Assembly (NCBI RefSeq): GCF_004010195.1
Contig: NC_057753.1
Span: 14,452,191 to 14,516,190, forward strand
Reading direction: 5' to 3'
DNA length: 64,000 nt
Source of the DNA: Chiloscyllium plagiosum
Taxonomy: Eukaryota
Under the pieces are notes generated by a model. It saw only the letters and a list, made by a program, of their open reading frames with translations, searched no databases and was not told where the DNA came from. The translations under genes were made by a program, and so were the position numbers. How positions within the stretch are numbered: position 1 is the first letter of the stretch; each line of letters begins with the position of its first letter. Of the stretch, positions 1,713-48,618 are shown one piece after another.

Positions 1713-2033
1713 AGCTCCTGGCCAAAGAAACTACCACAGATTCTTCTCTGGCACTGGCGGCTGTGAAATGCACCTCATTGAGTATGAACCGCAGCACCAG
1801 TACCTTGCTCAGCTTCGTGAAGTGGTACGGTGGTTGGGCAAATGAGAATCGCAGCTTCTGATCATTGCCTTGGGCAGCGTAGTCAGAACAGGGAGAATTC
1901 AGACGACTCTTCATAGGGAAGATAAATGAAGAACTTTGTCCATCAGCGACATTATAATTAAGGATCTCACCATCTACCTCTGTGCAGTGATCTTCACCAT
2001 CATGCAACCCAATAAGCAAACAATGCAGAAACC
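1713..2033 (+). pseudogene. Decayed TRAV-like V segment, opposite orientation (relic R1), with degenerate 23-RSS
   Basis: Reads ELLAKETTTDSSLALAAVKCTSLSMNRSTSTLLSFVKWY../..LLIIALGSVVRTGRIQTTLHREDK*RTLSISDIIIKDLTIYLCAV; followed by caccatc (1995-2001) + 23 nt + gcagaaacc (2025-2033). Confidence 0.7.
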
Positions 2034-2931
2034 CCCAGGAGACAGGAACCTTACCGACAACCTCGCCATCTCAAGCACAGCAACCCTGCAGAGGAGCAGC
2101 AAGAACAGAAAGAACATGCATTTCGCTGAGCTCCCATGTTCAGTTTAGAAATATTGCATCAATGTTAATTCGTGAGAACGTATACTGTTTCTATTTTCAA
2201 ATCATTTTGAAAAATGATATTATATATCAGCTTAGTAGAGGAACCGGTTGGATTTCACCCAAAGGGACGCACACTACCATTGCACATCAGTAGACCCTCT
2301 GAATGTGGAGTGCAACTCCCCTTCTTCCATTGCATTCGGGACAATGTTAATCAATGTCAATCGCACAGCCATTGGCATGCCCTATTGACAGAAGCAGAAC
2401 ATCAAAATGAACAGCAGCTCTCTGCTTTATGATGCAAAGCAGACCAGAGGAGGAAGTGACTTTGTTATACTTCCATCAACACACTTAACGAAAAACAGAC
2501 TCCCGAGATCTCTTGTATACAACATTCGTTAAAACAAGAGAATGATAATGGAGTGAGTAATGAGAGTAATGAGAGAAATTGCAGCTGAAATAAGTCTCAG
2601 AAAATTGAGATGAAAGACCCGTCGTGTAGTTGGCTTCTTGTTTTTCCATTATGATAGCTCCAATCAAATTCAGGCTGAGTTGACTGAGGAGCATCCAAAA
2701 CAAGGAGAGAATAAACGGGAAACTCACACTAAAGGTAAAGAGATGCCTATAGACAGTGGTGAAGATGACACTGAAGATCCACAGAGAAACGAAGAACTGA
2801 GATCAATAAATGGGAGATGGTTGGCAGTGCTACAGCAAAAACATCAGGAGAGGGATTTTGATTCACGTTCTTGGATTGTTATTGGCAATTAATTGTTGCA
2901 TACTTCACTTAAACAGACCCACATAACAACA

Positions 2932-2947
2932 CAGAGAGAGACGGAGT

Positions 2948-2981
<34 letters not shown>
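2932..2981. repeat. (GA)n microsatellite
   Basis: Interrupted AG run seen directly. Confidence 0.9.
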
Positions 2982-3473
2982 CGATTGCAATAGTGTGTTA
3001 TCAATAGATAGAGCTCTAGGTGATCACATCAATACGCTATTCTGGCAATACAATCAAATCAGCAGCATCATCCTTTCTAATACCTTGTCTTCAGTAATCT
3101 GTGGTCGTGTCGCTAGATGTTTCGCCTAACTCGCATGTATGCACGGTTCGGGAGAGGGTGTTCGTTTGAGTGCTGAGTCTGTGAAACCTGGAAACTGAGA
3201 TCTATCTCCCAGCTAACTGTCTACAAATCACATGACAGGAAATTGTTAACCTTGGGGACTTGCAGTTGAGTGTTCAGACATGACTCTCTTCTGTGTCTGT
3301 GTGAATATTTGGAGCCTTCAGCTGCTTTTCTCAGCAGCTCCGGGAAGCCATTGTGTAACAGCCCGATCGAGGTTATTTTGGTTTCCTCTTGGTGTGAGTT
3401 TGAACAGTATGTTGCGACAGCCCAGGGTCAGAACAACTCTAACCAACAGAGAGCCAATTTATGGTTCAAGGAA

Positions 3474-3512
3474 GTATTTTGTACAGTGGTGAGACTGTTT
3501 CTCATCATTGTA
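3474..3512 (-). other. 23-RSS of V1, defective heptamer
   Basis: Minus strand: TACAATG - 23 bp - ACAAAATAC; the essential first C of the heptamer is lost. Confidence 0.85.
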
Positions 3513-3970
3513 TCATCCAATAAAGCACAGTAATACATGGCAGTGTCAGAGAGCTGCAGCCCGCTTCTAGTCAAACTGGTGAATTTCTTTGAAGTCTGAA
3601 GTTCTACAGAGAAGCGATCTTCTGCAAAACTTGTTTTACTTTCAGAACCATCACTATACTTCCACAGAATAAACTTAGGCTGGCTGTCTCGGCGTTGCTG
3701 GTACCAATAAAATGTATAGCAGCTCCCTGTAGTTTCATAGGTACAGCTTAGAGTCACCTCATCTCCTTTTGTCCGAACAACTGAGGGGAGTGGCTGAGTG
3801 ACAGAATCTCCATGACTCAGATCCGAAGGGTAAAACAGAAATCAATGATAAACTGTCAGGCTGGGGTCAGTTTAAACCATGACTTGATGAAGAAATCGGC
3901 AACACATTTCCTTCACTGTTACCTGTTAACATTGCTGCCCACAGAACACCAAAATGCTGAGTGGCCACAT
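3513..3970 (-). pseudogene. TRAV/DV: TCR alpha/delta V segment V1 (leader 3923-3970, V exon 3513-3822), pseudogene
   Basis: Open V domain (TLSCTY..WYQQ..RFSVEL..DTAMYYCAL), but the leader is 48 nt with an in-frame TAA, the splice acceptor is CGG instead of CAG and the heptamer is TACAATG; paralog of intact V7. Confidence 0.85.
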
Positions 3971-4657
3971 TGTCGCTGTCCTCTGCGTAATACGATGGTC
4001 GGATATTTGAAGACAGTTATTCTCTAAACCCCATGGTAAAATGCTTTCATGTTACTACTGATTCCCACCTCACTGCCTTGTGTGGGTGGTGCTGCTCTAT
4101 TGGCAGAAGGAGGACATTAGACTCTCAGTGAAATGACACATCCCAAGCTGTGTACAGTCACTGGAACACCGAGAGATTTGAAAGATTGACTTCCATCCAT
4201 AATACATCACTATACCAGTTACACTCAATACTCTTCTTGTTTCACTGATTGAATGCCAAAATCTCACCATTTTTACTTCTTATTCAGTTTGCAGGAGCGG
4301 GAGAGGGACGTCATTACCTGATGCTACGCAGAGGATGTCCAACATCCACATAAGTCTTGTGGAGCTACAAATTGTCCAATGAAATATAATCCTGCAAATC
4401 CCACCCTCTATATTAGTTGAACCAATCTGAGACTTCTCCATCATTGTTTCCATTATGACTTTTGCGAAATGTGTATTTATTCTGCCCCTCAATTGCTGTT
4501 CTCTGTTCTCTGTCCTGAGCCTCAACATTGCCAATATGTGCTTCTGTTACTCCTTCTTAGCATACTTCACTGAGCTCAATCTCACCATTCTTCCTCGTTC
4601 AGTGGGTGTTTTCTAACAATTGTGTCACTCACTTTTGCAGTGACAATTTCAGTTCGT

Positions 4658-4755
4658 CTGTGTGTGTGTGTGTGTGTGTCTGTCTGTCTGTCTGTCGGTC
4701 CGTTTGTCACTCTGTCTGGTCTGTGTTTCCGTCTGTCTGTCCGTCTGTCTGTCTG
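4658..4755. repeat. (GT)n/(CTGT)n simple repeat
   Basis: Seen directly. Confidence 0.85.
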
Positions 4756-6143: not shown

Positions 6144-7730
6144 GAATAAACAGAACCTCTTAATGAACTGCGAGTTGTTCCTCTGGGAAACTAGCATGAG
6201 AGATTTGAAATGGGATGGTCAGAATACCAGAGGGCTAACAAAGGATGATGAAGTAACAAAGGAATCATTAGAATATCGCTAGTGAATTTATGAATGTGTG
6301 AATGAGGAGTACTAGAGGCTGCGAGTTGATGATGCTGTCAGTTAGAATGGTGTTGTGTGCTGCTGCCCCCCTTCTGGTTATAACTCTGCATAGTTTGAAC
6401 CTCCTTTTGTGCATTCATGGACATGGACCTGGAAGGGTCAACATTACATTGCGTTGAACAGAAGGGCGTGAAACACGGAAAGATCGTTTTGATCAATTCA
6501 TTCATTATCATGCCTTCAGTCAAGTTATGCCACAAAGCAACAGCCAGCTGCTTCTGTGCGAACATTACATCCTTGAGACAACTGTCCAGATGAACGTTTC
6601 TGATATTTTGAACATCTTCCCCATCAAACATTGAGACAGACCGAACAATATACAGCACAGCACATCGAAACAAACTCGTAAAGAAGTCAAACAAAATGCA
6701 CAACAAAACTTCCATGCAGACGTATTGATACATACGTTTTAGCACTTGCAGCTACGGTGGAAACCTACGGTGCACCAGTTCGTCGGCGACTGATTAATGT
6801 GTGTAGTTGGAAGTGTCACAACATAATGTCCTGCTCTGTTCTGTTCTGTACTATCAAAAGGAGAACTGCTGTATCTTTCGGTTTTGGACTAGCATCAATA
6901 GGACTGAAATCTGGAGTTGTGATTAACATTGATTATTCTCAAGCTGAATGTAATCACCCCAAGTGTTTCGAGTTGCATCCCTGAACTTCGCGGGACCTAT
7001 TCAAGTTTGGATTTTGAGATAATATTATTGTGATTGAGTCTTTAAAGCTACTCTTTATTTTTGAGTGAACAGTTTTAAGTAAAAATAAATCAGCAGCACC
7101 AACTAAACCAGCGACTATTTCTGCATGTAAAGACAAGGGCAGCAGGAGCATCCTGCAATATCTCCTCCAAATCTCTCTAATGACACTATAATTAGAAGTG
7201 TACCGCCCGTCCTTCAGCGTCTGGATCAATATTCTACCTTCGCCGCCCTAGCTATTTCCTGTGTCCATTTCCCCACTAAGTGATACAGCCATTTGAAAAG
7301 GCAGTTCATCACTAATTACTACAGATGCATTCATGTTGGACACGAAACGTTATGCCAGCCAGCGTCGACAAGATGGTCCAAGGGAAAAAATGATGCAAAG
7401 CTAATAGTGTTATTTGGGAATCAAGTTGACACATTTTCTCATCGTACTTGCTGAGAATTTGACGTTCTAACAAGTTGGTTGGCTAAAATGAACGATGAAA
7501 ATGTCATTTTTTTTTACTGGCAAATATAACAATCACAGGGGTGAGAGGAGAATAATCTTATTTAAGAAATACTTTGAGAAGAAACGGCATGTCAATATGT
7601 TTCAGCGTTTGTCTATTGGGATGAATAACCAGTTTCCCGATTGGAAAATACAATGTGGTTGCAGGGAGTTGGATGCTTGCACATATATTTCCTCCCATCA
7701 TTTCTCCATGGGGTTTGTTCTATGTTGCAG

Positions 7731-8296
7731 AGCTCCTGGCCAAAGAGCGGATTACGTACTCTCACCTCATCATAGTGGCAGCACGGTGGCTCAATGGTTA
7801 GCACTGCTGCCACAGAGAACCAGGGTCCCATGTTCGAATCCAGCCTCAGGTGACCATCTCTGTTGAGTTTGCGTATTCTCCCCGTCTGGGTTTCCGTCCA
7901 AAGATGTGGAGGTCAGGTAATTTGGCTATGCTAAATTGCACGTAGAGTTAGGTGCATTAGTCAGAGGAAAGTGTGTTTAGTTGGGTTACTCTTCAGAGGG
8001 TTGGTATGGACTTGTTGGTCTGAAGGGCCTGTTCCCACACTGTTGTGAATCTAATTACTGGAAGCCTCCCAGTAACTGCAGTACTGACACCTTGCTCAGA
8101 TTTGTGCAATGGGTCCAATGGTGTCACAGGCAGGATGTACTTTGGCAGCGTGTTCAGAGCAGGGAGGTCATTCTAACCTGAAATGAAAATACAGCACTTT
8201 GACCATCAGAGACATTGGGAAAGAGAGTGCTGGAGAGTACCCCAGCGCCGTGACCATCCCTACTATACAACCCAATCAGCAGCCAGTACAGACAGG
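7731..8296 (+). pseudogene. Decayed TRAV-like V segment (relic R2), interrupted by a SINE
   Basis: Acceptor gttgcag|agctcctggcc (ELLAKERITYS), then after the SINE NCSTDTLLRFVQW..STLTIRDIGKESAGEYPSAV; ccctact + 23 nt + acagacagg (8288-8296). Confidence 0.65.
7775..8056 (+). mobile_element. HE1/V-SINE-type SINE, diverged
   Basis: ggcagcacggtggctcaatggttagcactgctgcc head, similar to the 5815 copy. Confidence 0.8.
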
Positions 8297-10713: not shown

Positions 10714-12413
10714 TGTCGAGGTCCTCTGCGTGAAAGGTCAGTTGTATAGTTGAGCAACCCTTTTCAATATCCCGCCCTCAGTGAACTGCTGACGTAGCTG
10801 TGGAAGCGTCTTACGTCCTTGCCTTCTGTGGACGATGATGCAATGTGTCTGGAATGAAGAAAGCAGTTTCATAGTGAACTGGCACATCCCAATCTCAGTT
10901 ACACTCACTGTACATAAAATGGAGCATTGAGAATTGTGATACATTGACTTCCATTTGTGATAAGCAATTGCCCTCTCAAGACTCTGCTCTTTTTCTGTTC
11001 AAAGTCCTCAAACGAACACATTTCTTGTTCTTAAGCAGTTCATACTTTCCTTCAAATTGTCCACCTGGTCCCCAAGATTTCCCCAATGCTTGTGGCCCCA
11101 TAAGCTGTCTCCTCCCAAATTGCAATCACACCTTCCACATCACTGGACTCCATCTCAACCTTATCCAGTAGCATCTCTGATATAACTTTTAACAGATTCT
11201 CCCTATTGCTGTCTCTCTGTCGACAGGCACGAGGTGATCACTCTTTCCCTCTGTTAGTTCCTCCTGGCATTCTTCACTGAGCTCAGTTGCACCTTCCTTC
11301 TTCGCCTCTGTTGAAATCTTTCTCTTACTGAACGCAGACGGTTGACAGAACGGGATTCACTGTGCATCTGAATACTGTTACAGGAGCTGTCGTCGGCTCC
11401 AGGACCTTCAGTGTGTTGTGTGCCTGTCTGTCTCGGTGTCTGTACTTATCTGTGTGTTTCGCTGGAGTGGGGAAGCGTGTCCTACTTCCAATGGGATGTA
11501 TGTACCAGGATGTTCACTGAATTCGGAAGAGGCAAGGCCGCCTTGTGTTTCACTTCAATTACGTTTACAGTGGTGAAATGTCATCCTCTGCTAATGAACT
11601 GAAGCTAATACAATTGAGCATCGTGATAATCACCAAGGAAACAGTCAAAGGATGAGCACAAGCAGACATCAATTTTACACGTGACAACAGTCTCAACACG
11701 AGTGTGCACACATGCAGAGAGAGAGAGAGAGCAAGAGAGACAGAGAGAGAGAGATGGGTGTTATGTTCTGTTCTAAACAGGCAGAACTGTGTGTGATCAC
11801 GTCGATGGGTGAAAAGGTTGATGCGACAGTTCCTCAATATAATCAAATTCGCAAGGTTTGCAATTCCAAACGACTCCCCCAGAACTCTGCTCAGAAAGAA
11901 AAATGGAAATATTTGGAAGCTTACCAGAAACAATCACTGTTCCTGAAACCTAACTCCTATTTCTCTCCAGAGATGCTGTCAGTCCTGCAATTTTCCCAAA
12001 AAAAAAATTCCTTTTTTTGTTCTGATTTCCAGGATCCACAGTTCTTACCGTTTTATTTTGACTCAGTAAACTGCATGCTTTTGCCTCACTGCCTTGTGTG
12101 GGCGTTGAGGATGTAAAACTCCGAGAAGGACCGTTGTCTCCCAGTTCATGAACTAAAAATCATAGGACAGCAAATTGGTTGATGGTGGGCATTAGAATGG
12201 ATGAGGTTACACATTGCTCTGTTCTGTGGAGGTGCGCAAGTTCAGAGTGCACAGTTTACTTTCTCAAGCAGCACAAGAAACAATTCGGTTACAGTTTGAT
12301 GTAAGGTTAGTTTGGTTTCCTCTCGGTATTTGTTCAGGTTCCTGAAAGCACGTAGTAACTTTCCAACACTCTATGAAAACCTCAATAGATGGAACTATCT
12401 GTGGTCCAAAGGC

Positions 12414-12452
12414 AGTTTTTGTACAGTGGAGAGACTGTTTATCATCACTGTG
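12414..12452 (-). other. 23-RSS of V3
   Basis: CACAGTG - 23 bp - ACAAAAACT, near consensus. Confidence 0.92.
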
Positions 12453-12890
12453 TCACTCAGAGCGCAGTAATACACGGCAGAGTCAGTCAGTTCTAGCCCA
12501 GTAATAGTCAAACTGGTGAACTTATTCGAGGTCTGAAGTTCTCCTGAGAAGCGCTTTTTCGCAAAATCTGCTGTATCCTCAGAGCCACCAGTACCTTTCC
12601 CCAGAATATACTCGGGCTGTCTGTCCAGGCGCTGGCGGTACCAGTACAACCAATAGACGCTCCATGTAGTATCATAGGTACAGCGCAGAGTCACTGCCTC
12701 TCCTTCTGTGTGAAAAGCTGAGGACAGTGACTGAGTGACAGAATTTCCGTTGCTCGGATCTGAAAGGGAAAACAGATATCAATTGAAAAGTGTCAGGCTA
12801 GGCTCGTTGAAAACCGATTTTTAAAAGAAACATATATTCGAATTGCTCCACATTTGCACCCCACACAACGCAGATGATGAGTAGGCACAT
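12453..12890 (-). pseudogene. TRAV/DV: TCR alpha/delta V segment V3: intact V exon (12453-12759) and RSS, leader splice donor deleted
   Basis: Open V: TLRCTYDTTWSVYWLYWYRQ..DSAVYYCALSD; leader MCLLIICVVWGA lacks the ~13 nt containing AG|GT found in paralog V8, and read-through ends at TAG in the intron. Confidence 0.8.
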
Positions 12891-17830: not shown

Positions 17831-18977
17831 AGCTGTGTTAACACACATACACATTCACAACACACACGAACAAATAGGGTACTTGTGAGCGTTAGTGTTG
17901 ACCTGCATAAATAGGATAGAGGGGTGATTACGGGATGTCATGAGAGAGTCAGTGTGGGGAAAACAGACCTGGTCAGCGCATGAATTACAGATCCACCGAA
18001 TCAAATCTTCTAAGGATGTTTCCTGTTTCAATTCAAACTCGTCCGACTCTTGAAACCTCCCGAGAAAACAAATCCAGGCCCTCCACTCTTTCCATGTCTA
18101 TCTCAGGCCTGAATATAATCAGCACCCAAACTCTATGGCAAATGATTCCTTAGATTATTTTCACACTGACAGAAGAAATGCCTTCTCACCCTAACTTCAA
18201 TGTATCATTCCTTATTCTGAGAATACGCATCTGTTCCTTTATTCTCCAACACGGTGATTGTTATTCCAAACTATCTCGTCCTTTTTCAAATTCAAATGCA
18301 GAGACAACATTATTAATGAATTTGTAAAATACGCCTTTCATTATTGAATGTTGGGTGGCAAGCCAACAAAAAAAAAGGCAGCACGTTACAAACCCACGGC
18401 CACTTACATCGAGATGACTCAGGGGAGCAAACAAATGGGAACACCATCAGCTGCATGTTCTCTTCCAAGTCATTCACCATTCTAACTTGGAAATGTAACG
18501 CCATCCCTTCAGTTTCATTTTGTGAAAATCTTGCCATTCCCTCATGTTCCACATGTTCAAATACGCAGAAAGTATGAGAAAAGCTTCAAAAGGCACGTCA
18601 CTATTACCTTCTCCATGTGTATTAAGAGTGAGCAAGCCAGCCGGCGAAGCCCACATCTCCTCAGGGAATTAATCATCCCTCATTGGGGAATCATTGGGGA
18701 ATCGAGTAGACATTTTATAAAAGCAAATGTTGTGAATTTGAGACTCTGTCACATGGCGGGCTAATGTGAGTGTGCAAATGTTTTTTTTTAACTACAACAG
18801 TGTGATGACAATAGACATGTCTTAAAACTTACTTTGAGAACAATCAGATTGTGTGAATATATACTCATATAAAACCGTTGAAATGGACGGCCAATTTCAA
18901 TTGGGGAATATAATGTATTTCCACAAAGTAGGATGCTTGTACCCTTGTTGTCTCTCATAATTTCTCCTACGTTGCAG

Positions 18978-19293
18978 AACTCATGGCCAAACGGCGGATC
19001 ACGCAGTCTTCCCTGGCACTGGTGGGCTATCGAAGGCATTCCAGTGACAATGACTGCAGACCCATACCTTCCTCAACGTCTTATAGTGGGCCGCTGTCGT
19101 GACAGACAGAGCTGCAAATTCTGAGCACTGCATTTGGCAAGGTGGCCAGAGCAGGGAGGATTCGGGCCACTTTTCTCTGGGAGCAGAAACGCAGCGTTTT
19201 TGTTGTCAGGGAAATCAGGAGACCTGATCTCATACATCTCTGTGCTGTGATTATCATCGAGTTACAATTGAATTGGCAGCCAGTACAGAAACT
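18978..19293 (+). pseudogene. Decayed TRAV-like V segment (relic R3, best preserved)
   Basis: Acceptor ctacgttgcag|; with small frameshifts reads ELMAKRRITQSSLALV-AIEGIPVTM-C..QILSTAFGKVARAGRIRATFLWEQKRSVFVVREIRRPDLIHLCAV; catcgag + 23 nt + acagaaact (19285-19293). Confidence 0.75.
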
Positions 19294-20680
19294 CCGGGGA
19301 AACAGGAATGATACATACAGCCTCATCATCTCAATGTCAACAACCGCGTACTGAAAAAATCACCAGTAAGAGAAAGTGAATTTTGTCAAGCTTCCATTTT
19401 CAATTTGGAAATATTCCCCATGATTTGTAATCTAGAGAATATAGAGTGTTTCCATTTCGAAACAATGTGTTCAGAGACTTGATGAGATACTTTTCTGCCT
19501 GTCTCGAACCGGAATCTATTTGAACCAGATTTAGGCACACTGCCGCTGCACATCAATAACTCCTCAGAATCTCAAGTTTAACACACTTGCTTTGAAAGAA
19601 TTCGCTGTAATGGCGACAATCAATGTTAATTGCACCTCTACCTTTATGCCCTCTTGACAGGAATGCAACACAGAAATAAGCAACAATTCTCCTCTTGATG
19701 GTGATTAAGCAGGCCAGCACAGGAAATGAAACTGGTACTCTCCCATTCACACATTAACCAAAGGCAAAGATCTGAGATCACTTACACAACGCTTTGGTTA
19801 AACCCAAAGAATAACAGTGGAATCAGTAATAAGAGCTGTTACACGAAAATGCAGCGGAAAAGAACATTCCTTAAATTGACACTACATGAACCACCACGTG
19901 ACGCATTTTTGTTTCATTATGAGATCTCCCATCAAAGTGAGGTTGATTCCCATGATACGGAAAGAATCTAAAAGAAGGACAGAATGAAGATGAAAAGCAG
20001 ATAAACGGTAGTGGATGCGAATAGAGGGGGCTAAACATACTCAGTGTGGAGATTAAACTAAAGTACTGTGTGGAAGTAGAACTGAAAATGCAACTGTTAC
20101 ATTGAATCTCCACATGCTCAAACATGTTACCACACACATACACACACACACTAATAAACATGCACATGCATTTCATACACGGACACCCAAACACACAGAG
20201 AGCCTGGTGTCTATGTTCTATTCGAAGAAGGTAGAAAACGTTTCATGTGATCACATCAATGATGAAATTATGGAAAAAGCAGTCGAATCAGCATCTTCAG
20301 TGATCCCCCTTCTGAAACTCCACCTCCGTTAAACTGATGTCGTCTCTCTAGATGCTCCCACCTCATTCTTTTGTGGTGGAGATACAGATGTGAAACTTGG
20401 AGAAGGACTGCTGTCTGTAACTGCATTGGCTACAAATTACAACACAGCACACATCTTAGGGCGTCGATTGAAATGGGTGTGACCAAATATATGATGTTCT
20501 CTTTCTGTGTGCAATGTAGGAATCTGCAGTTTATTTTCTCAGCAGCTCCGAGAATCACTGGTTGACAGCCTTATCTTAAAGTGACTTCCTCTCAGTGTGT
20601 GTTTAACTTCCTGAAACACATAGTAGCTTCCAAGATGCTGACAAAACCTCAAAAGATAGATCAATCTCTGATCAAAAAGT

Positions 20681-20719
20681 AGTTTTTGTACAGGGGTGAG
20701 ACAGTTCCTCATCACTGTG
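20681..20719 (-). other. 23-RSS of V4
   Basis: CACAGTG - 23 bp - ACAAAAACT. Confidence 0.92.
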
Positions 20720-21171
20720 TCCCAGAAAGCACAGTAGTACACGAAACTGTCTGTTAGTTGTAGACCAGTGATAGTCAAACTGGTGAATTTATTTGCCGTC
20801 TGAAGGTCTACAGAGAAGCGATCTTGAGCAAAATCTGCTTTATCCTCATTTCCTTCAGAATATTTGCTCAGTATATACTCGAGTTGTGTGCCTGGGCGCT
20901 GTCGGAACCAATATAACCGATAATAGTTGGCTGTCGAATCATAGGTACAACTTAGAGTCACTGCATCGCCTTCTGTCCGAAAATCTGAAGAGAGTAACTG
21001 GGTGATTGAATTTCCATGACTCAGGCCTGAAACGAAAGCAGATATATATTGCAAAATATCAGGCTGACATCAATGCAAAATATGATCATATAAAGGAATA
21101 TGAATGATACTTTCTCCATGCTTACCTATTAGAATTGATCCCCACACTACCCAGATTCTGAGTAGACACAT
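20720..21171 (-). CDS. TRAV/DV: TCR alpha/delta V segment V4, apparently functional (leader 21126-21171, V exon 20720-21026)
   Basis: Leader MCLLRIWVVWGSILI, GTAAGC donor, TTCAG acceptor, open V with Cys, WFRQ and YYCAFW, consensus RSS. Confidence 0.9.
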
Positions 21172-29980: not shown

Positions 29981-29984
29981 GATA

Positions 29985-31500: not shown

Positions 31501-31527
31501 AGCATGGAATTAAAGAATTAAAGCATA

Positions 31528-31646
31528 CGCCCAGAACAGAAATGCAGCACCTTGAACATCAGAGACAATGGAAGGGAGGATCCTGCCGTCGACCTCACCT
31601 ATAGTGATCATCAAATTGATACAATCAGTAACAAGACAGATACCCG
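31528..31646 (+). pseudogene. 3' remnant of a TRAV-like V segment (relic R4), truncated by CR1
   Basis: RPEQKCSTLNIRDNGREDPAV matches FR3 of relics R1-R3; followed by acagatacc and the shared downstream sequence. Confidence 0.55.
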
Positions 31647-32571: not shown

Positions 32572-33024
32572 CTGTCCCAGAAAGCTCAGTAATACATGGC
32601 AACATCAGACAGCTGTAGCCCGGCGACAGTCAAACTGGTGAATTTCGCCAAATTCTGAAGATCCATAGAGAAACGACCTTGCACAAAATTTGCTTTATGA
32701 TCATCACCAAAAGGATCTTCCAACAAAATAAATTCAGGCTGTGAGCCTTGGTGCAGTCGGGTACCAGAACAGTGTATCATAGATGTAGTATCATAGGTAC
32801 AGGTTAGTGTCACCACATCGCCTTCTGTCCGAACATCTGAGGGGAGTGACTGATTGACAGAATCTCCGTTAGTCGGGTCTGAAAGGGAAAACAGATATCA
32901 AATGTAAAGAGCCAGACTGCGCTCGGTTTATCCTATGAGTTAATAACAACATGTGAAATGCATTTCCTCCATGCTTACCTGTTAGAATTGCTCCCAACAC
33001 AACCCAAATGCTGATTAGCCGCAT
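32572..33024 (-). pseudogene. TRAV/DV: TCR alpha/delta V segment V6 (leader 32979-33024, V exon 32572-32878), pseudogene
   Basis: Intact leader MRLISIWVVLGAILT and splice sites, but local frameshifts remove the WY motif and the second Cys codon is TGA (TAT TAC TGA). Confidence 0.88.
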
Positions 33025-33723: not shown

Positions 33724-33882
33724 NNNNNNNNNNNNNNNNNNNNNNNNNNNNNNNNNNNNNNNNNNNNNNNNNNNNNNNNNNNNNNNNNNNNNNNNNNNNN
33801 NNNNNNNNNNNNNNNNNNNNNNNNNNNNNNNNNNNNNNNNNNNNNNNNNNNNNNNNNNNNNNNNNNNNNNNNNNNNNNNNNN
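33724..33882. other. Assembly gap (N run)
   Basis: 159 N. Confidence 1.
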
Positions 33883-40906: not shown

Positions 40907-40998
40907 CTGATAAGAACAAGCACTTGATCTTTGCCAAAAGGCCTAGAAGCGATTTAAACTGATAAGTAAACATATTCGGAGCGAAAAGGCCGAGAAGC
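40907..40998 (-). pseudogene. RNU2: Two tandem U2 snRNA 5' fragments at the 5' end of the Tx1 element
   Basis: Minus strand gcttctcggccttttcgct..cttatcagtttaa then atcgcttctaggccttttggcaaagatcaagtg-cttgttcttatcag, compared from memory with U2 ATCGCTTCTCGGCCTTTTGGCTAAGATCAAGTGTAGTATCTGTTCTTATCAGTTTAA. Confidence 0.85.
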
Positions 40999-42771
40999 TG
41001 GCGGCTCAGAGTTACTGCAGCTGTGACCAGACATACGGCAGCAACTGACAGCAGCATCCAATCTGACAGAACCGTCATAACGCATACACAGACAAATAAG
41101 ATCAGTGTGGTTATTAGAGAGCTGGCCCATGTGAAAATTACAGAATGGTTAATGTGGGGATCACAAAGATGATCAGACTGGGAAAAAAACAGGCATGGTG
41201 AAGGTGTGGATTACAGATTCTCCTAACCAAGTCCTCTCTGGACTTTATATGCTTCATTCAACCATGTGTATATCTTGCAACCTCCAGAAGATACAAGGCC
41301 AGGCTGCATAGTCTTCCATATCTATCTCAGACTTGTGCATATTTTGCACAAAATCTCTGTCGTAAACATTTCCACAGATTCTTCTCTATTTGAGAGAACA
41401 AATGTCTCCTCATTTTGATCTTAAACGTGTGCCTCCTTATTCTGAGCTTATGCCACTGCTCCTGGATTCTTCCACGGTACAACAAGCTTTCTGTGTTGAT
41501 TCTGTCAATTTTTCATTTCACACCACTACAGCATACGACAGTTGAATGTGAGCCTGCTGACACAAATCGGGAAACTACCACACTGTCACAAGATCTCTCC
41601 ATGCTGCTGGCATATATGCAGATGAATTATGCAGACATTGATAAGCAGAAAGTATGTTTAATCCTATTGATCCATTTGCAGAACTCCAGATCTGCATTAA
41701 CACAAACGAATTATGTGCTATGTTAGTGGGATTCGGACAGGAATGCTTTCACACTTTAACATGCTGGAGTGAAAATGGATTGCCGTTATTGGACACGAAC
41801 AAATCAAGAAACTGAGCAAGTGTTTCAGCATTAGGAAGACAGCTGACGTACAACCTGCCATGTAATGGGATCTAACTTTGATTCTGTTTTAAGGATTCGC
41901 TCCATCACATTGTGAGATCTGTCTGTTGTGCACAATGCAGCCTTGATCCAAAAATTAACCTTGAACAAACGCATCCCCTAATCAACCTGTGGATTGTTAC
42001 TCCGAGAAACTGACATGAGAGATGTGGAAAGATCGGTCCGGAGTGACAGGCGTGTATAACAAGAGAAACAGTGGACAAAACAAATGTTAAAATGTCTCCA
42101 GTGAATTTATGAATGTCAGCTGTACATAGGAGTTGAGATCAACAAAAACTGCACATTGTCGCCATGTGGGCGCGTTGTTGATGCTGTCAGTTTGAATTGT
42201 ACTGCAAGTTGCTGATCTGTAGTGTATGTTACTCTCTGATTGAACCATTGATTGGTTTGACGACTCTCTTGTACAGTAACGGGCATCCATCAACAGAGGG
42301 TGGCATTATATCTAGATGAAGGGAAGGTCATGAAGCGAGGGAAAAGATTTAGTTTTTTTTTAAATCTAGTCATTCACAATCACTCCTCTAATCAATTTAT
42401 CTCAAAAATGCGCCAGTCTGCAGCTTATGTGCTGACATTAGATCCGTGATGAAACGCTCCAGATTAACGTTTCTAAATTTTGAGCATGTTTCCCATCAGG
42501 CAATAAGACAGACAGAACAATACACAGCACAACCGTTGAAACACTCACATAAAGGTATCAAATCAAACATACACAACGAAACGTTCTTATACACAAATAC
42601 ATATTTGCACTAACACGTGAAAACTCAGATAAATGAATACCAGGGATTGGTGGTTGGAATCAACGTCCAGTTTCCCTACTGGGAAGTCCAATGTGCTTCT
42701 AGGGAGCTGGAAGCTTGCACTCTTATCTCCTCTCATCAGTTCGTCAACCGGGATTTGAATTCGTGTTCGCG

Positions 42772-43092
42772 AGCTCCTGTCCAAAGAAACGATCACGCAT
42801 TCTTCTCTGGTACTGCCAGCTGTGAAGTGCACGTCGTTGAGAATGAAACGCAGCACCTCTACCTTGCTCAGCTTCATGAAGTGGGGCGGTAGCGTGGCAA
42901 ACGACGATCACACCTTCTGATTGTTGCCTTGGGCAGCCTAGTCAGAACAGGGAGGAATCTTACCACTCTTCACAGGGAAGAGAAATGCAACACTTCATCC
43001 ATCAGCGACATCAGGAGTAAGGCTCTCAATATTTATCTCTGCCCAGTGATCTTCACCACCATGCAACCCAATAAGCAAACAATACAGAAACA
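42772..43092 (+). pseudogene. Decayed TRAV-like V segment (relic R5, paralog of R1)
   Basis: ELLSKETITHSSLVLPAVK..STSTLLSFMKW../..LLIVALGSLVRTGRNLTTLHREEKCNTSSISDIRSKALNIYLCPV; caccacc + 23 nt + acagaaaca. Confidence 0.7.
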
Positions 43093-44364
43093 CCTAGGAG
43101 ATAGGAATCTTACCGACAGCCTCGCCATCTCAAGCACAACAACCCTGCAGAAGAGCAGCAAGAACAGAATGAACATGCATTTTGCGGAGCTCCCACGTCC
43201 AATTCAGAAATGTTGCATCAGTATTAATTGGTGAGAACTTATATTGTTTCTATTTCCAAATCATTCTGAAAGATGATATTATTAATCTCTAGATCAGCTA
43301 AGTAGAGAAACCGGGAAGATTTTACCCAAAGGGATGCACACTACCATTGCATATCAGTACCCCGTCTGAATGTTAAGTGTGACTCCCCTTCTTCCATTTC
43401 ATTTGGGACAATGAGGAATAACCAATGTTAATCGCACATCCATCGACATGTCCTATTGACAAGAATACAACATCAAATTGAACAGCAGCGCTCTGCTTTA
43501 TGATGCAAAGCAGACCAGAGGAGGAAGTGATTTTGTTAAACTTCCATCACACACTTAATGAAAAGCAAAATCACGGGACCTCTCGTATACCATATTAGTT
43601 AAAACGAGAGAAAGATATAGGAATGAGTAATGAGAGTAATCTCCGTAAAATTGCAGCTGAAAAGAAGTCTCAAAAAATTGAGATGAAAGACCCCGTGGTG
43701 TAACTGGTTTCTTTTTTTACGTATGATACCGCCAATCAAACTGAGGCTAGAGAGGGATTTTGATTCACGTTCTGGGATTGTTATTGATTAATAAATTGTT
43801 GCATATTTCACTTAAACAGGCCCACATAACAACACAGAGAGAGAGAGAGAAAGAGAGATGGTTGCAATGGTGTGTACTCAATAGATACAGTTCAATGTGA
43901 TCACATCGATGATGGGAAAACAGATACACTATTCTGGCAATACAATCAAATCAGCATCACCAGCCTTTCGAATAACTTGTCTTCAATAATCTGTGGTCGT
44001 GTCGCTAGATGTTTCTCCTTACTCGCATGTAAGCGCAGTTAGGGGGAGGGTGTTTGTGTGAGTGCTGAGTCTGTGAAACTTGGAAACTGAGATCTTTCTC
44101 CCAGCGGACCGTCTACAAACCACATGACAGGAAATTGTTAACCATGGGGCTTGCAGTTGAGTGTTCAGACATGACTCTCTTCCGTATACTGTGTGAGTGT
44201 TTGGAGTCTTCAGCTTATTTTCTCAGAAGCTCCAGGAAGCCATTGTGTAACAGCCCGATCGAGGTTATTTTGGTTTCCTCTTGGTGCAAGTTTAAACAGT
44301 ACGTTACAACAGCCCAGGATCAGACCAACTCCAACCAACAGAGAGCCAATTTATGGTTCAAGGA

Positions 44365-44403
44365 AGTTTTTGTACAGGGGCAAGACTGTTTCTCATCATT
44401 GTG
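44365..44403 (-). other. 23-RSS of V7
   Basis: CACAATG - 23 bp - ACAAAAACT. Confidence 0.9.
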
Positions 44404-44859
44404 TCATCCAATAAAGCACAGTAATACATGGCAGTGTCAGAGAGCTGCAGCCCGCTTATAGTCAAACTGGTGAATTTCTTTGAGGTCTGAAGTTCTGCAG
44501 AGAAACGATCTTCCGCGAAACTTGCTTTACTTTCAGAACCATCGCTATACTTCCACAGAATAAATTCCGGCTGGGTGTCTCGGCGTTGCTGGTACCAATA
44601 AAATGTATAGTAACTCACTGTAGTTTCATAGGTACAGCTTAGAGTCACCTCATCTCCTTTTGTCCGAACAACCGAGGGGAGTGACTGAGTGACGGAATCT
44701 CCATGACTCAGATCTGAAAGGTAAAACAGAAATCAATTGCAAACTATCAGGTTGGTGTCAATTTAAACCATGAGTTGATAAAGAAATGTGCAATGCATTT
44801 CCTTCGCTGTTACCTGTTAATATTGCTACCAATAGAAACAAAATGCTGAGTGGCCTCAT
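44404..44859 (-). CDS. TRAV/DV: TCR alpha/delta V segment V7, apparently functional (leader 44814-44859, V exon 44404-44713)
   Basis: Leader MRPLSILFLLVAILT, GTAACA donor, TTCAG acceptor, open V DSVTQ..TLSCTY..WYQQ..YYCALLD. Confidence 0.9.

Positions 44860-45584: not shown

Positions 45585-45587
<3 letters not shown>

Positions 45588-45646
<59 letters not shown>
45588..45646. repeat. (GT)n microsatellite
   Basis: Perfect dinucleotide run. Confidence 0.95.
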
Positions 45647-47907
45647 TGTGCTCAATTGTCTCTCTGGGTGATGGGAGATTTATCTTCATGCTTTGACGGG
45701 GTCATAACCATTTTGTGCTGCACTTCAACTTGTCTTGAAGTAATAATGTGCCACCCTGTACTGGCGGCGTGACGTTTCTACAACCAAAAACCAAAATCGC
45801 CAGGAAATCACTCAGAGGGCAGCACCAGCAGACAGCAGCATTCAATCTGATCGCACCATCAGCACACACAAACAATCGCACGGTACAATACACAGAGAGA
45901 GGAAAAGTGACGTTATAACAGTTAGCCAGTGTGAAGATTTAAGAGAAATCACTTTGGGGATTACAGAGATAGTTACTATAGAGAAAACAGGCATGTTCAG
46001 GGCATGAATTACAGAACTTCAAATCAAGTCTTGTAAGGATCTCTTACTATTTCTGATCAAACACATCTGACTCTTGGAATCTCCCGAGAGCACAAGCCAA
46101 TGCTATCTAGTCTTTCAACGTTTATCTCAGCCTTGAGCATATTTGGCTCCCAGGTTCTGTGGCAAATCATTCAACAGATTATTTTCCCTCTGAGAAAAGA
46201 AATGCCTCCTCACCTCGAGCTTCGATGTGTGATTACTTCCTCTCACATTACATCATCTGCTCCTACATCCGCCATCAGAGCGAAACAACTTTGCCACGTC
46301 TGCTCTGTTACGTTGTTATTCCATACCTCTCAAACATGTGGGACTGGAAGTTGTTCCTCAAGAATCAGAGTAGGATGCCACCATCCCGCTTATATGCAAC
46401 TCGCTTTTGCACTGACGAAATTTCCGATGTTGATAAATACAAAGGATGTTTGCACACATTCATTCCCCTTCAGACCTTCAGCCGTGTAACAATGCAATGT
46501 ATTTTTCTGTTAAATGAGTGGGGTTGTAATTCCACATTTTAGAGTGCAGGAGTGGAGATGAATGTCTGGTCTGCTAATCGTCATGAACAAATTAGGAAAT
46601 TAAGCAGGACTTCCAGCATTTGGAAACACATGAAATACAACACGCTCTTGAAGAGAATCTAAGTTTGAGTTCGTTTTAAGAATCAGACACACTACATTTT
46701 GAAGTCTATCCATTGTGTACAAACTGTCTCGAATCCAGAAATTCACTCTGAATAAATAGAATTTCTTAATAAACTGGGAATTGTCTTGCTGGGAAACTGG
46801 CATGAGAGATTTAGAAAGGGCTGTTCAGAATGACAGGCGGGTGAACATAGGGTAGTGAAGGAAAAAATGAATCATTAGAATATCGCCAGTGAATTTATGA
46901 ATGTCGGCTAGACATGCGAAGGCTGTGAGTTGATGATGCTGTCAGTTAGAATAGTGCTGTGTGTTGCTGTTCCTCCTTCTGATTAAATTTCTGCATAGTT
47001 TGAACTTTCTTTTGTGCACTCTTGGGCATGCACCTGGAAGGGTCAACGTTGTTTGCGTTGAACAGAAGGGGGCGAAACACAGAATGATCTTTTTGATCAA
47101 TTCATTCATTATCATGCCTGCAGTCAACATATGCCACAAAGCAACAGCCAGTTGCTTCTGTGCGAACATTAGATCCGTGAGAGAACTGTCCAGGTGAACG
47201 TTTCTGATATTTTGAACATTTTCCCATCAAACATTAAGGCAGACCGAATAATATATAGTACAGCACATCGAAACACACTCGTAAAGAACTCAAACAAATA
47301 TGCACAACAAAACTTTCATGCAGACATATGATGCACACACTTTAGCACTTGCAGCTAAATGCATAGATGGAAACCGATGATGCACCAGTTCGTCGGCTAC
47401 TGATTACTGTGTGTAGTTGGAAATATCACAACTACACACAGCATTTCCTGCTGTCTCCTGATGTGTACCATAAGAAGGGGAATTGGTGTTTCTTTTGGAT
47501 TTGGACATCCATCAATAGGACATTAATCTGGAGTTGTGATTAGCATTGATTATACTCAAGCTGAATGCAATCACCCCAAGTGTTTCGAATCACGTCCCTT
47601 ATCTTCGTGGGACCTACACAAATCTTGATTTTGCGATAATATTATTGTGACTGAGTTTTGAAAGCTACTGTTAATTATTGAGAAAAGTGGTAAGCAAAAT
47701 GAAATCAGCAGCACCGACCAAACGAGCCACTATTTCCACCTGTAAGAATAAGAGCGGAAAAAAACATCTTGCAATATCTCCTCCAAGTCACTCAGAAGAA
47801 TCCAGAATTGGAAATGCATCACCCTTTCTTCAGTGTCTCTGGATCAATATTCTACCTTCGCCACCTATCTCCCCGCCAAATGATACAGCCACGTGAAAGG
47901 ACAGTTT

Positions 47908-48217
47908 TAGATTAGATTACCTCTGTGTGGAAACAGGCCCTTCAGCCGAACATGTCCAGACTGACCCTCCGAAGAGCAACCCACCCATTCCCCTACATTT
48001 ACCCCTGAAAAATCCACCTACCACTATGGGCAGTTTAGCATGGCCAATTCACCTGACCTGCATGTCTTTGGACTTTGAGAGGAAACTGGAGCACCCAGAG
48101 AAAACCGACGCAGGCACGGGGAAAATGTGCAAACTCCACACAGACAGTTGCCCGAGCCAGGAATTGAAACCGGGTCCCTGGCGCTGTGAGGCAGCAGTGC
48201 TAACCAATGAGCCACCG
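47908..48217 (-). mobile_element. HE1/V-SINE-type SINE, reverse orientation
   Basis: Reverse complement of the SINE head, core and tail; abuts a plus-strand SINE 3' half (48222-48380). Confidence 0.85.
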
Positions 48218-48389
48218 TTTCGTCCCACAGACCAAAGATGTGCAGGTCAGATGATTTGGCCGTGCTAAACTGCGCATAGTGTTAGGTGCATCATTCAGAC
48301 GGGAATGGGTTACTCTTCGGAGGGTTGGTGTGGACTTGTTGGGCTAAACGGCCTGTTTCCACACAGTAGGGAATCTAATCATTCTGCCT

Positions 48390-48618
48390 CTGGAAGCCTC
48401 GAACTAACTGCAGTACCGATACCTTGCTCAGATTTGTGCAATGGTTCGGTTGGTGTCACAGACAGGATATATTTTGGCAGCTTGTTCAGAGCAGGGAGGA
48501 TTCGGGTCATTCTTACCTGAAATGAAAATACAGCACTTTGACCATCAGAGACATTGGGAGAGAATGTGCTGCAGAGTACCCCTTCTATACAACCTAATCA
48601 GCCGCAAGTGCAGAAACC
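48390..48618 (+). pseudogene. Decayed TRAV-like V segment (relic R6, paralog of R2), 5' part lost
   Basis: NCSTDTLLRFVQWF..FGSLFRAGRIRVILT*..STLTIRDIGREC; nonamer-like gcagaaacc at 48610-48618. Confidence 0.6.

What the first reader, a model, noticed from the sequence alone, without database searches (positions are those of the whole stretch)
1713..48618. Hidden second V family on the opposite strand: six decayed TRAV-like relics
Seen: six homologous plus-strand segments (1713, 7731, 18978, 31528, 42772, 48390) that look intergenic. Their by-eye consensus is a V domain: splice acceptor, then ELLAKE.ITQSSLALVA.EG.PVTMNCST.TLL.FVQW...QLLI.A.G.V.RAGRI..TL..E.K.STLTIRDI..ED..IYLCAV. In R1, R2, R3 and R5 a nonamer-like (a/g)caga(a)ac(c/t/a) or acagacagg lies exactly 23 bp after a degenerate heptamer. 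Knowledge: a short C'' region, GRxxATL and YLCAV resemble TRAV families distinct from the YYCAL-type TRAV/DV genes on the minus strand. Inference: this is an inverted, probably unannotated V lineage that would have rearranged in the opposite mode (inversion vs deletion) to its neighbours.
Basis: partly seen in the sequence, partly recalled or inferred. Interest (0 to 1): 0.85.

Follow-up and report, generated by a model that had tools for sequence, protein, structure and literature searches.

The report
Dead second V family, opposite strand
Six broken copies of a second type of T-cell-receptor variable gene lie tail-to-tail beside the working variable genes of a shark, carried along as dead passengers each time the gene pair was duplicated; this is an ordinary kind of gene fossil.

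Summary
Six homologous plus-strand segments sit at the stated places and nowhere else in the window. They are pseudogenes of a real V family. A profile of their C-terminal halves found one intact relative among 1.84 billion proteins: P0005, Chiloscyllium punctatum chiPu_0019012 (Pfam V-set 7.4e-11). It matches R1 at 1.5e-29 and the minus-strand Vs at only about 25% identity. All six copies are broken by frameshifts, stops, loss of Cys23, a SINE insertion or truncation. Five of six keep a 23-bp spacer and a good nonamer behind a decayed heptamer. Each lies tail-to-tail 0.9-1.5 kb (R2: 4.1 kb, across an inserted stretch) from a minus-strand V, in a roughly 2.4-kb two-V cassette copied as a whole. 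Between cassettes the relic is no better conserved than the non-coding spacer, so it was mostly a dead passenger. Which family is "inverted" cannot be told from the window. Unchecked scan notes place the delta D/J beyond the window's end, which would make the relics deletional and the intact Vs inversional. The scan noted pseudogenised Vs in both orientations elsewhere in this genome (s1-886037, unchecked). The assembly gap touches no relic. This is a new member of a known kind, of modest interest.

The parts
1570..1711 (+). R1 upstream homology (candidate leader exon and leader intron; leader not defined)
   Evidence: Aligned among R1, R5, R3 and R2. 79.6% identical to R5.
1712..1992 (+). R1 V exon pseudogene: 1 frameshift after Trp41-Tyr, 2 stops, Cys23 replaced by Arg
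   Evidence: Frameshift-aware alignment to P0005: 51 of 94 residues identical. tblastn E 1.5e-29.
1995..2033 (+). R1 RSS relic: heptamer CACCATC, 23-bp spacer, nonamer GCAGAAACC
7730..7780 (+). R2 V exon, 5' part (end of leader and FR1), cut off by a SINE insertion at about 7781-8058
   Evidence: nhmmer hit 7584-7781
8059..8257 (+). R2 V exon, 3' part (Cys23 to FR3), with a 16-nt and a 7-nt deletion, a stop and Cys104 lost
8258..8296 (+). R2 RSS relic: CCCTACT, 23-bp spacer, ACAGACAGG
18977..19252 (+). R3 V exon pseudogene: 5 frameshifts, 1 stop; Cys23, Trp41 and Cys104 codons still present
   Evidence: 39 of 94 residues identical to P0005. tblastn E 2.5e-12.
19255..19293 (+). R3 RSS relic: CATCGAG, 23-bp spacer, ACAGAAACT
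31525..31611 (+). R4: only the FR3 third of the V exon is left; the 5' part is missing next to retroelement-like sequence
   Evidence: nhmmer hit 31501-31761; tblastn E 0.046
31612..31644 (+). R4 RSS relic: CAAATTG, 17-bp spacer (shortened), ACAGATACC
42771..43051 (+). R5 V exon pseudogene (paralogue of R1): the same 1-nt frameshift, Cys23 replaced by Arg, acceptor AG mutated
   Evidence: 50 of 94 residues identical to P0005. 81% identical to R1 with no gaps. Present at about 94% identity, with no indel inside the exon, in contigs of a related species.
43054..43092 (+). R5 RSS relic: CACCACC, 23-bp spacer identical to that of R1, ACAGAAACA
48391..48579 (+). R6 V exon, 3' part (paralogue of R2): 5' part lost at the SINE, same 16-nt deletion, a stop, and the region around Cys104 deleted
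   Evidence: E 1.2e-6
48580..48618 (+). R6 RSS relic: CCCTTCT, 23-bp spacer, GCAGAAACC
3431..3841 (-). Partner V of R1 (YYCAL type, open V exon; heptamer reads TACAATG)
12398..12778 (-). Partner V of R2 (open). A 2.9-kb stretch with a V pseudogene (about 10190-10770) lies between them and is absent from the paralogous block.
20542..21069 (-). Partner V of R3 (open V exon)
32589..32897 (-). Partner V of R4, itself a pseudogene (4 frameshifts, stop at the Cys104 codon)
44361..44732 (-). Partner V of R5 (open; Pfam V-set 4e-18)
49962..50498 (-). Partner V of R6 (open V exon)
33724..33882 (.). Assembly gap. It lies outside every relic and partner V; continuity across it is unknown.

Best explanation
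The six segments are non-functional remains of a second, TRAV-like V gene family. Its intact representative is Chiloscyllium punctatum chiPu_0019012. In an ancestral locus one such V (+ strand, 23-RSS at its 3' end) lay tail-to-tail, RSS facing RSS, a little over 1 kb from a YYCAL-type V (- strand). This two-V cassette of about 2.4 kb was then copied in tandem, and later a block of about 12 kb holding two cassettes was duplicated again. The plus-strand member lost function early. One branch (R1/R5, R3 and perhaps R4) carries a 1-nt deletion after Trp41. The other (R2/R6) carries a SINE insertion and deletions. It then drifted like the spacer DNA while selection kept the minus-strand partner. 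Shown here: homology to a V-set gene, the lesions, the RSS anatomy, the cassette structure, and drift at the rate of the spacer. Inferred: the order of events; that an intact ancestor once joined to a 12-RSS partner; and that it did so by the topological mode (deletion or inversion) opposite to its partner's. The last point follows from the established rule that V orientation relative to J-C decides the mode.
For: Homology to a V gene:
- The profile of relic C-halves (A1) finds P0005 at E 8.6e-14 over profile positions 2-50. P0005 is the only hit that looks like a single V gene, among 9 hits with E <= 1e-3 in 1.84e9 proteins.
- P0005 is GCC20452.1. It scores Pfam V-set at 7.4e-11, 42.7 bits against a cut-off of 26.
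- P0005 against the window by tblastn: R1 1.5e-29, R5 1.4e-22, R3 2.5e-12, R6 1.2e-6, R2 1e-5, R4 0.046. The minus-strand Vs score 6e-8 to 1e-3 at 22-28% identity.
- A1 against the PDB: 19 of the 20 best matches are TCR alpha and 1 is TCR delta, all aligned on FR3; best E 1.6e-4.

Lesions.

RSS: 23-bp spacer in 5 of 6 copies.

Cassette structure:
- 6 of 10 minus-strand Vs have a relic 0.9-1.5 kb beyond their RSS (R2: 4.1 kb, with an inserted stretch).
- Units U1 and U3 align end to end: 2497 columns for units of 2454 and 2381 nt.
- Block 1570-16500 is about 80% identical to block 42629-54100.
- The trees pair (R1,R5) and (R2,R6) just as (V3431,V44361) and (V12398,V49962).

Drift:
- Between U1 and U3 or U4, the relic is 0.53-0.66 identical, the spacer 0.50-0.69 and the V exon 0.68-0.78.
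- The related species B carries R5 at about 94% identity, like its flanks, with no indel in the exon.

Pair conserved in another shark: P0003 (chiPu_0019013, the next locus tag, recorded on a contig of the same length, 272,995 bp) is a YYCAL-type V.
Against: None of 8 stop-free relic pieces reached Pfam V-set at E <= 1. hhalign of the relic FR3 profile against the minus Vs gave only 18% probability, E 1.3e-3. No lesion is common to all six copies. R2 and R6 keep the frame where R1, R5 and R3 have the deletion, so early cassette copies may still have been functional. Differences between R1 and R5 fall 10/13/25 on codon positions 1/2/3 (binomial p 0.006). Their in-frame dN/dS is 0.59 and 0.40, against 1.15-2.5 in the other frames. 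That is not expected of two copies that were dead when they were duplicated. The placement of the shared 1-nt deletion depends on an alignment of diverged sequence. Whole-protein PDB matches of P0005 are as good for kappa light chains as for TCR alpha. RNA runs gave 0 reads on any part of the stretch, which is no test.
Confidence: 0.85

Rival explanations
1. Independent decay. Each copy was a working V gene when its cassette was duplicated, and the six died separately and recently. On this reading the family was a true second, functional repertoire of this region.
For: No lesion is shared by all six. The lineage-weighted consensus of the C-terminal half carries no stop or frameshift. R1-R5 differences are enriched at third codon positions (10/13/25, p 0.006), and in-frame dN/dS is 0.4-0.6 against more than 1 off frame.
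Against: R1 and R5 align without any gap, so the 1-nt frameshift is shared; the Cys23-to-Arg change is shared too. R3 lacks a base at the same spot. R2 and R6 share the SINE insertion and the 16-nt deletion. Relic identity between U1, U3 and U4 equals that of the non-coding spacer. The listed differences between species A and B in R5 show no codon periodicity: my hand count of 17 listed differences is 2/9/6, and the list is incomplete.
Confidence: 0.1
2. The family is an immunoglobulin light-chain-type V that was caught in the TCR locus, not a TRAV/TRDV-type V.
For: The best whole-protein PDB matches of P0005 are kappa light-chain domains: 33.5 bits for the best single domain, and 47 bits for single light chains against 44 bits for the best TCR alpha chain. 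FR2 has a KLLI motif.
Against: The FR3 profile matches TCR alpha in 19 of the 20 best PDB rows. The RSS spacer is 23 bp, as in the neighbouring Vs; kappa-type V segments carry 12-bp spacers (recalled). The copies sit inside a cluster of V segments that the scan's notes call TCR alpha/delta (unchecked).
Confidence: 0.05
3. The segments are copies of a dispersed repeat or transposon that happens to look like a V domain.
For: They are repeated, and two copies adjoin SINE sequence.
Against: Copies occur only next to V genes, always on the + strand and always in the same place within a collinear cassette. They match a V-set protein at E 1.5e-29. They carry an RSS at the position expected after Cys104.
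Confidence: 0.01

Closest known systems
Chiloscyllium punctatum hypothetical protein chiPu_0019012 (GCC20452.1; P0005)
   Same: Same V family. It is 44-50% identical in translation to R1 and R5 across the whole V exon. The similarity runs on through the RSS and about 45 codons of 3' flank. Cys23, Trp41 and Cys104 are present and it scores as V-set. The next locus tag is a YYCAL-type V.
   Different: Its V exon is open, whereas the six window copies are broken. It is a computed single-ORF model that reads through the RSS. Its DNA, orientation and expression could not be seen here.
V pseudogenes and V remnants of T-cell-receptor loci (for example the V remnants of the catfish TRB locus, one of them downstream of TRBC2 in the opposite orientation; PMC8656973, passages read)
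   Same: Decayed V exons with or without an RSS, lying among working V genes, some in the opposite transcriptional orientation.
   Different: Here the dead V is a fixed part of a repeated two-V cassette and always converges on a V of another family.
Inverted V segments that rearrange by inversion (teleost TRA/TRD loci in which all V genes lie in the opposite orientation to TRDC and TRAC, PMC8656973 abstract and passages; the inverted V behind the C exon of the beta and delta loci, PMC12227049 passage)
   Same: V orientation relative to D-J-C decides whether joining is by deletion or by inversion. Both orientations coexist in one locus.
   Different: Those inverted Vs are functional. Here one orientation is all dead within the window, and the window cannot show which orientation is the inverted one.
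Mammalian TCR alpha V domains (for example 2B4 TCR alpha, PDB 3qib chain C)
   Same: An FR3 of the GR..T......STL.I.D....D...Y.CA type; best E 1.6e-4 with a 50-position profile.
   Different: Distant similarity only. The N-terminal half resembles kappa V about as much.

Membership tests
Antigen-receptor V gene segment (Ig V-set domain exon) | Sequence homology to the V-set domain | tested here: met
   Met indirectly. The relics match P0005 at E 1.5e-29 to 0.046, and P0005 scores Pfam V-set at 7.4e-11. The FR3 profile finds TCR alpha chains in the PDB. The direct test failed: none of 8 stop-free pieces hit V-set at E <= 1.
Antigen-receptor V gene segment (Ig V-set domain exon) | Cys23, Trp41 and Cys104 at the canonical places | tested here: inconclusive
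   The Trp41 codon is present in R1, R2, R3, R5 and R6. Cys23 is present in R2, R3 and R6 and is Arg in R1 and R5. Cys104 is present in R1, R3 and R5 and is lost in R2, R4 and R6. The family has all three (P0005); no single relic keeps all three in one frame.
Antigen-receptor V gene segment (Ig V-set domain exon) | RSS (heptamer, 12- or 23-bp spacer, nonamer) right after the V exon | tested here: met
   The spacer is 23 bp in 5 of 6 copies. Four of the six nonamers (R1, R3, R5, R6) match the recalled consensus ACAAAAACC at 7 of 9 positions, R4 at 6 and R2 at 5. The heptamers are decayed, with CAC kept in 2 of 6. The neighbouring Vs have CACAGTG or CACAATG, a 23-bp spacer and ACAAAAACT.
Antigen-receptor V gene segment (Ig V-set domain exon) | Leader exon, short intron and splice acceptor in front of the V exon | tested here: inconclusive
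   An AG preceded by a pyrimidine-rich stretch is seen in R1, R2 and R3, and 140 nt of upstream homology is shared by four copies. No convincing leader exon was found. The P0005 model is a single ORF.
Functional V gene | Open reading frame through the V exon | tested here: not met
   R1 has 1 frameshift and 2 stops. R5 has 1 frameshift. R3 has 5 frameshifts and 1 stop. R2 has a SINE insertion and deletions. R6 and R4 are truncated.
Functional V gene | Use in rearranged transcripts | not testable with these tools
   The two RNA runs of the species gave 0 reads on the whole 2.5-kb stretch, the intact V included, so they are no test.
TRAV/TRDV type (as against the Ig light-chain type) | 23-bp spacer RSS, a place inside the TCR alpha/delta V cluster, and a TRAV-like FR3 | tested here: inconclusive
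   The spacer is 23 bp. The FR3 profile matches TCR alpha in 19 of the 20 best rows. The copies are flanked by V segments on both sides. However, whole-protein matches of P0005 are equally good for kappa chains. The locus identity rests on unchecked scan notes. No phylogeny with shark reference Vs was possible.
Dispersed repeat / transposon | Copies scattered without regard to neighbouring genes, in both orientations | tested here: not met
   Within the window there are 7 nhmmer hits, all on the + strand and all at the same position of the V cassette. Spread across the genome was not testable.

The most novel reading that the evidence does not exclude
The convergent two-V cassette is an old architecture of the elasmobranch TCR alpha/delta locus. 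It is kept in the bamboo shark, where its plus-type member still has an open V exon. If the delta D/J cluster really lies on the high-coordinate side, as unchecked scan notes say, then in this D-proximal region the surviving Vs work by inversion. The six relics would then be fossils of the family that sat in the deletional orientation, and so a record of a shift in rearrangement mode within one locus.
Probability: 0.2. Interest if true: 0.6.

Novelty: new member of a known kind. Interest (0 to 1): 0.3.

Why it matters
The finding adds a second V family, and a repeated two-V cassette, to the germline map of a shark TCR V cluster. The papers I could reach leave that germline incomplete: the nurse-shark study (PMC5931798, passages read) says it lacked a complete germline sequence for the locus. 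It also shows that the cluster grew by copying units that carried a dead gene along. Annotation should therefore expect one opposite-strand pseudogene per cassette. The intact bamboo-shark relative offers a way to ask whether this family is still used anywhere. The orientation question (which family joins by inversion) would interest comparative immunologists, but it is not settled here. Otherwise these are ordinary pseudogenes.

Tried and rejected
Pfam on single stop-free pieces gave no V-set hit for any of the 8 relic pieces. They are too short and too decayed. I did not treat this as disproof once an intact relative had been found.

The word-index protein search with the R5 piece found nothing. 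With P0005 as query it found only P0005 itself among 14 candidates. With the V at 62172 it found 4 proteins, none of them encoded by the window, so I could not reach DNA beyond the window that way.

I therefore could not read the bamboo-shark locus, its RSS or the orientation of the gene pair.

The PDB search with a minus-strand V is dominated by two-domain scFv chains. It does not separate TCR from Ig V, so I dropped it as a classifier.

My lineage-weighted consensus is unreliable in its N-terminal half, because SINE remnants of R2 and R6 were misaligned there. I use only its C-terminal half.

I looked by eye for a CTCF-like motif behind the relic RSS. It is not conserved in R3, so I make no claim.

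The RSS region of R1 and R5 is 44 of 48 identical, against 81% for the exon. The sample is too small to argue for constraint.

Literature searches listed no paper on opposite-strand V pseudogenes in a shark TCR alpha/delta locus. The library misses most subscription journals, so this is weak evidence that nothing is in print.

Papers and what I saw of them:
- PMC12227049: 3 passages.
- PMC10322711: 4 passages.
- PMC8656973: 3 passages, including part of the abstract.
- PMC5931798: 12 passages.
- All other papers: search listing only.

I did not ask for supplementary files. Those of PMC10322711 (bamboo-shark TRA repertoire) might show whether the P0005-type V is expressed.

Full report
**What is there.**
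- With R1 plus flanks as query, blastn hits R2 (75% over 142 nt), R3 (64.7% over 502 nt), R5 (83.4% over 631 nt) and R6. With R3 as query it also reaches R4.
- A MAFFT alignment, turned into an nhmmer profile, finds 7 hits with E <= 3.7e-49. These are the six relics, with R2 split in two by an insertion, all on the + strand. The next hit has E 0.48.
- So the window holds exactly these copies and none on the other strand.

**Assembly gap.** The only run of N is 33724-33882.
- The nearest relic homology ends at 31761.
- The homology of R4's partner V unit with other units ends at 33246.
- The next relic starts at 42622.
- No paralogous alignment spans the gap. No relic, RSS or partner V touches it.
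- Continuity across the gap is unknown. It bears only on the distance, and on the number of units, between R4 and R5. I did not try to fill it.

**Are they V genes?** Single stop-free pieces were too weak. None of 8 relic pieces reached Pfam V-set at E <= 1, while two minus-strand Vs scored 4e-18 and 4e-16.

Profiles did better.
- I aligned nine stop-free pieces of the C-terminal halves by reference (A1).
- Against the PDB, the 20 best matches to this profile were 19 TCR alpha chains and 1 TCR delta chain. All aligned on FR3 at the proper place; the best E was 1.6e-4.
- Against the minus-strand Vs, hhalign gave E 1.3e-3 with probability 18%.

The decisive result came from scoring A1 against 1.84 billion representative proteins.
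- Nine proteins had E <= 1e-3.
- The best was P0005, at 8.6e-14, matched over profile positions 2-50.
- P0005 is GCC20452.1, hypothetical protein chiPu_0019012 of Chiloscyllium punctatum.
- It is a 164-residue single-ORF model with an open V domain holding Cys23, Trp41 and Cys104.
- It scores Pfam V-set at 7.4e-11, 42.7 bits against a cut-off of 26.
- Its model reads on through what is plainly an RSS and the 3' flank.

tblastn of P0005 against the window gave:

| Target | E-value | Note |
|---|---|---|
| R1 | 1.5e-29 | two pieces, 50% and 44% identical |
| R5 | 1.4e-22 | |
| R3 | 2.5e-12 | |
| R6 | 1.2e-6 | |
| R2 | 1e-5 | |
| R4 | 0.046 | |
| minus-strand Vs | 6e-8 to 1e-3 | 22-28% identical, with gaps in CDR1 and in the C'-C'' region |

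I could not submit a consensus itself to Pfam.

**State of the copies.** I used a frameshift-aware alignment to the V region of P0005, the DNA alignment and the frame read-outs.
- R1: 51 of 94 residues identical, one frameshift right after Trp41-Tyr, two stops, Cys23 replaced by Arg.
- R5: 50 of 94 identical, with the same frameshift and the same Cys23 change. Its acceptor AG is mutated.
- R3: 39 of 94 identical, five frameshifts and one stop.
- R2: interrupted in FR1 by a SINE at about 7781-8058. It also has a 16-nt and a 7-nt deletion.
- R6: shares the SINE junction and the 16-nt deletion, and has lost its 5' part.
- R4: keeps only FR3 and the RSS.

All six are pseudogenes.

**RSS.**

| Copy | Heptamer | Spacer (bp) | Nonamer |
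|---|---|---|---|
| R1 | CACCATC | 23 | GCAGAAACC |
| R5 | CACCACC | 23 | ACAGAAACA |
| R3 | CATCGAG | 23 | ACAGAAACT |
| R2 | CCCTACT | 23 | ACAGACAGG |
| R6 | CCCTTCT | 23 | GCAGAAACC |
| R4 | CAAATTG | 17 | ACAGATACC |

- The spacer is 23 bp in 5 of 6 copies.
- The intact neighbours carry CACAGTG or CACAATG, a 23-bp spacer, and ACAAAAACT or a close variant.
- So the relics have the same RSS type as their neighbours, with good nonamers and decayed heptamers.
- The P0005 residues after Cys104 are compatible with a heptamer ending CCATG, 23 bases and a nonamer ending CAGAAACC. This is inferred from the protein only.

**Surroundings.**
- The minus strand holds ten YYCAL-type V units.
- Seven have open V exons (3431, 12398, 20542, 44361, 49962, 55609, 62172). 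Three are pseudogenes (about 10.2 kb, about 27.3 kb, and 32589).
- Six of the ten have a relic beyond their RSS in convergent orientation, RSS facing RSS. The RSSs lie 0.9-1.5 kb apart in five pairs.
- R2 is separated from its partner at 12398 by an extra 2.9 kb that contains the 10.2-kb pseudogene. This stretch is missing from the paralogous block.
- Neither nhmmer nor tblastn found a relic next to the other four Vs. LINE-like sequence lies 3' of two of them.

**Duplication history.**
- A block at about 1570-16500 is repeated at about 42629-54100 with roughly 80% identity. Hence R1 and R5, and R2 and R6, are pairs.
- Trees of relics and of partner Vs both recover these pairs with full support. 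Deeper forks are unresolved.
- Whole units align end to end: U1 (1570-4023) against U3 (18845-21225) gives 2497 columns for 2454 and 2381 nt.
- In that alignment, identity in 100-nt bins is 0.56-0.66 over the relic, 0.58-0.67 over much of the spacer, and 0.68-0.78 over the V exon. Shuffled spacers give 0.25-0.38.
- U1 and U3 against U4 behave alike, apart from a deletion of about 0.5 kb. In the U2/U6 lineage the spacer is not alignable.
- So the cassette was copied as a whole. Since U1, U3 and U4 split, the relic has drifted like non-coding DNA, while the partner V was conserved.
- R1, R5 and R3 all lack one base within a few bases after the Trp41 codon, where R2, R6 and P0005 keep the frame. 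Together with the drift, this means that at least this branch was dead before it multiplied.
- R2 and R6 were disabled by other lesions, which they share.

**Evidence that does not fit neatly.**
- Differences between R1 and R5 fall 10, 13 and 25 on codon positions 1, 2 and 3 (binomial p 0.006).
- In-frame dN/dS is 0.59 and 0.40, against 1.15-2.5 in the other two frames.
- CpG sites explain only part of this: non-CpG differences fall 7, 12 and 18.
- This hints at some purifying selection, or gene conversion from live relatives, after the block duplication. Yet the two copies share a frameshift and the loss of Cys23.
- The whole exon is not conserved: it is 81% identical, against 80-85% in the flanks.
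- I leave this unexplained.

**Other species.**
- Contigs of a related, coded species B cover R5 and its flanks: 42600-43819 with 66 other letters and 28 gap letters in one run, and 42794-43819 with 61 other letters and 5 gap letters in another.
- No insertion or deletion is listed inside the V exon. The frameshift is therefore shared, and the relic predates the split of the two species.
- I counted by hand the 17 listed differences that lie in a defined frame. They fall 2, 9 and 6 on codon positions 1, 2 and 3. The list is incomplete (83 rows not shown).
- In the bamboo shark, the next locus tag after P0005 (chiPu_0019013, P0003) is a YYCAL-type V, 53% identical to the V at 62172. It is recorded on a contig of the same length, 272,995 bp.
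- So the pair seems older than the split from Chiloscyllium.

**Expression.** Two single-cell RNA runs of the species gave 0 reads on the whole 2.5-kb stretch, the intact V included. This is no test.

**Orientation and mode of joining.**
- A V in the opposite orientation to its neighbours must join by the opposite topological mode. This follows from established knowledge. In catfish, for example, all 140 TRA/TRD V genes lie opposite to TRDC and TRAC (PMC8656973, abstract and passages).
- The window holds no D, J or C, so it cannot show which family is inverted.
- First-stage notes of this scan, which I could not check, place the TCR delta D and J segments about 36 kb beyond the window's end. 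They place V-cluster findings up to 2.3 Mb before its start.
- If D-J-C reads on the + strand there, the relics are in the deletional orientation and the intact minus-strand Vs are the inversional ones.
- A lone opposite-strand V noted 5.9 kb beyond the end (s1-886228) might be a live member of this family. This is untested.

**Family name.**
- The FR3 is TRAV-like and the RSS has a 23-bp spacer.
- Whole-protein PDB matches of P0005 are about equally good for kappa light chains and TCR alpha. A PDB search with a minus-strand V does not discriminate either.
- I therefore call the family TRAV-like and leave TRAV versus TRDV open.
- The word-index search found no other close relative of P0005; only P0005 itself passed among 14 candidates.

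**Literature.**
- Five searches listed no paper on opposite-strand V pseudogenes or two-V cassettes in a shark TCR alpha/delta locus.
- The nurse-shark paper says it lacked a complete germline sequence for the locus (PMC5931798, passages).
- Supplements were not consulted.

**Verdict.** These are old V pseudogenes of a real second V family, carried as passengers in a repeated two-V cassette. This is a new member of a known kind, of modest interest (0.3). The orientation question is the one point that could raise it.

Noticed in passing
window 1712-1992 versus 42771-43051: Differences between the two dead paralogues R1 and R5 are enriched at third codon positions (10/13/25, p 0.006). In-frame dN/dS is 0.4-0.6, against more than 1 in the other frames. 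Yet both share a frameshift and the loss of Cys23. Possible causes are past gene conversion from live relatives or mutational bias.
   Followed up: partly
window 3473-3520 (minus strand): The V at 3431-3841 has an open V exon, but its heptamer reads TACAATG and its nonamer ACAAAATAC. Its paralogue at 44361 has CACAATG and ACAAAAACT. So the RSS is probably weakened on an otherwise intact V.
   Followed up: no
window about 10190-10770, 27250-27680 and 32520-32960 (minus strand): Three YYCAL-type Vs are pseudogenes: 1 stop and 1 frameshift; 4 stops; and 4 frameshifts with a stop at the Cys104 codon. The first lies in a 2.9-kb stretch that is absent from the paralogous block.
   Followed up: partly
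window about 7781-8058 and 47906-48390: A tRNA-like SINE is inserted in FR1 of R2. R6 keeps the 3' half of the same SINE and has a second SINE copy in the opposite orientation where its 5' part should be. Further copies lie at about 5824-6126 and 15055-15305.
   Followed up: partly
window 44718-44759: Contigs of the related species B replace 40 nt just upstream of the V exon at 44361 with 3 letters, in both runs.
   Followed up: no
P0005 (Chiloscyllium punctatum GCC20452.1): The deposited protein is a single-ORF model. It starts 19 codons upstream of the V exon and reads through the RSS into about 45 codons of 3' flank. That flank is still alignable in translation with the flank of R1. So the model is not a real protein end to end.
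   Followed up: partly
window 33996-41013: Large retroelement-like ORFs, with an internal repeat (34267-35464 is about 77% identical to 39380-40595), lie just after the assembly gap. This fits the scan's note of a composite retro-insertion.
   Followed up: no
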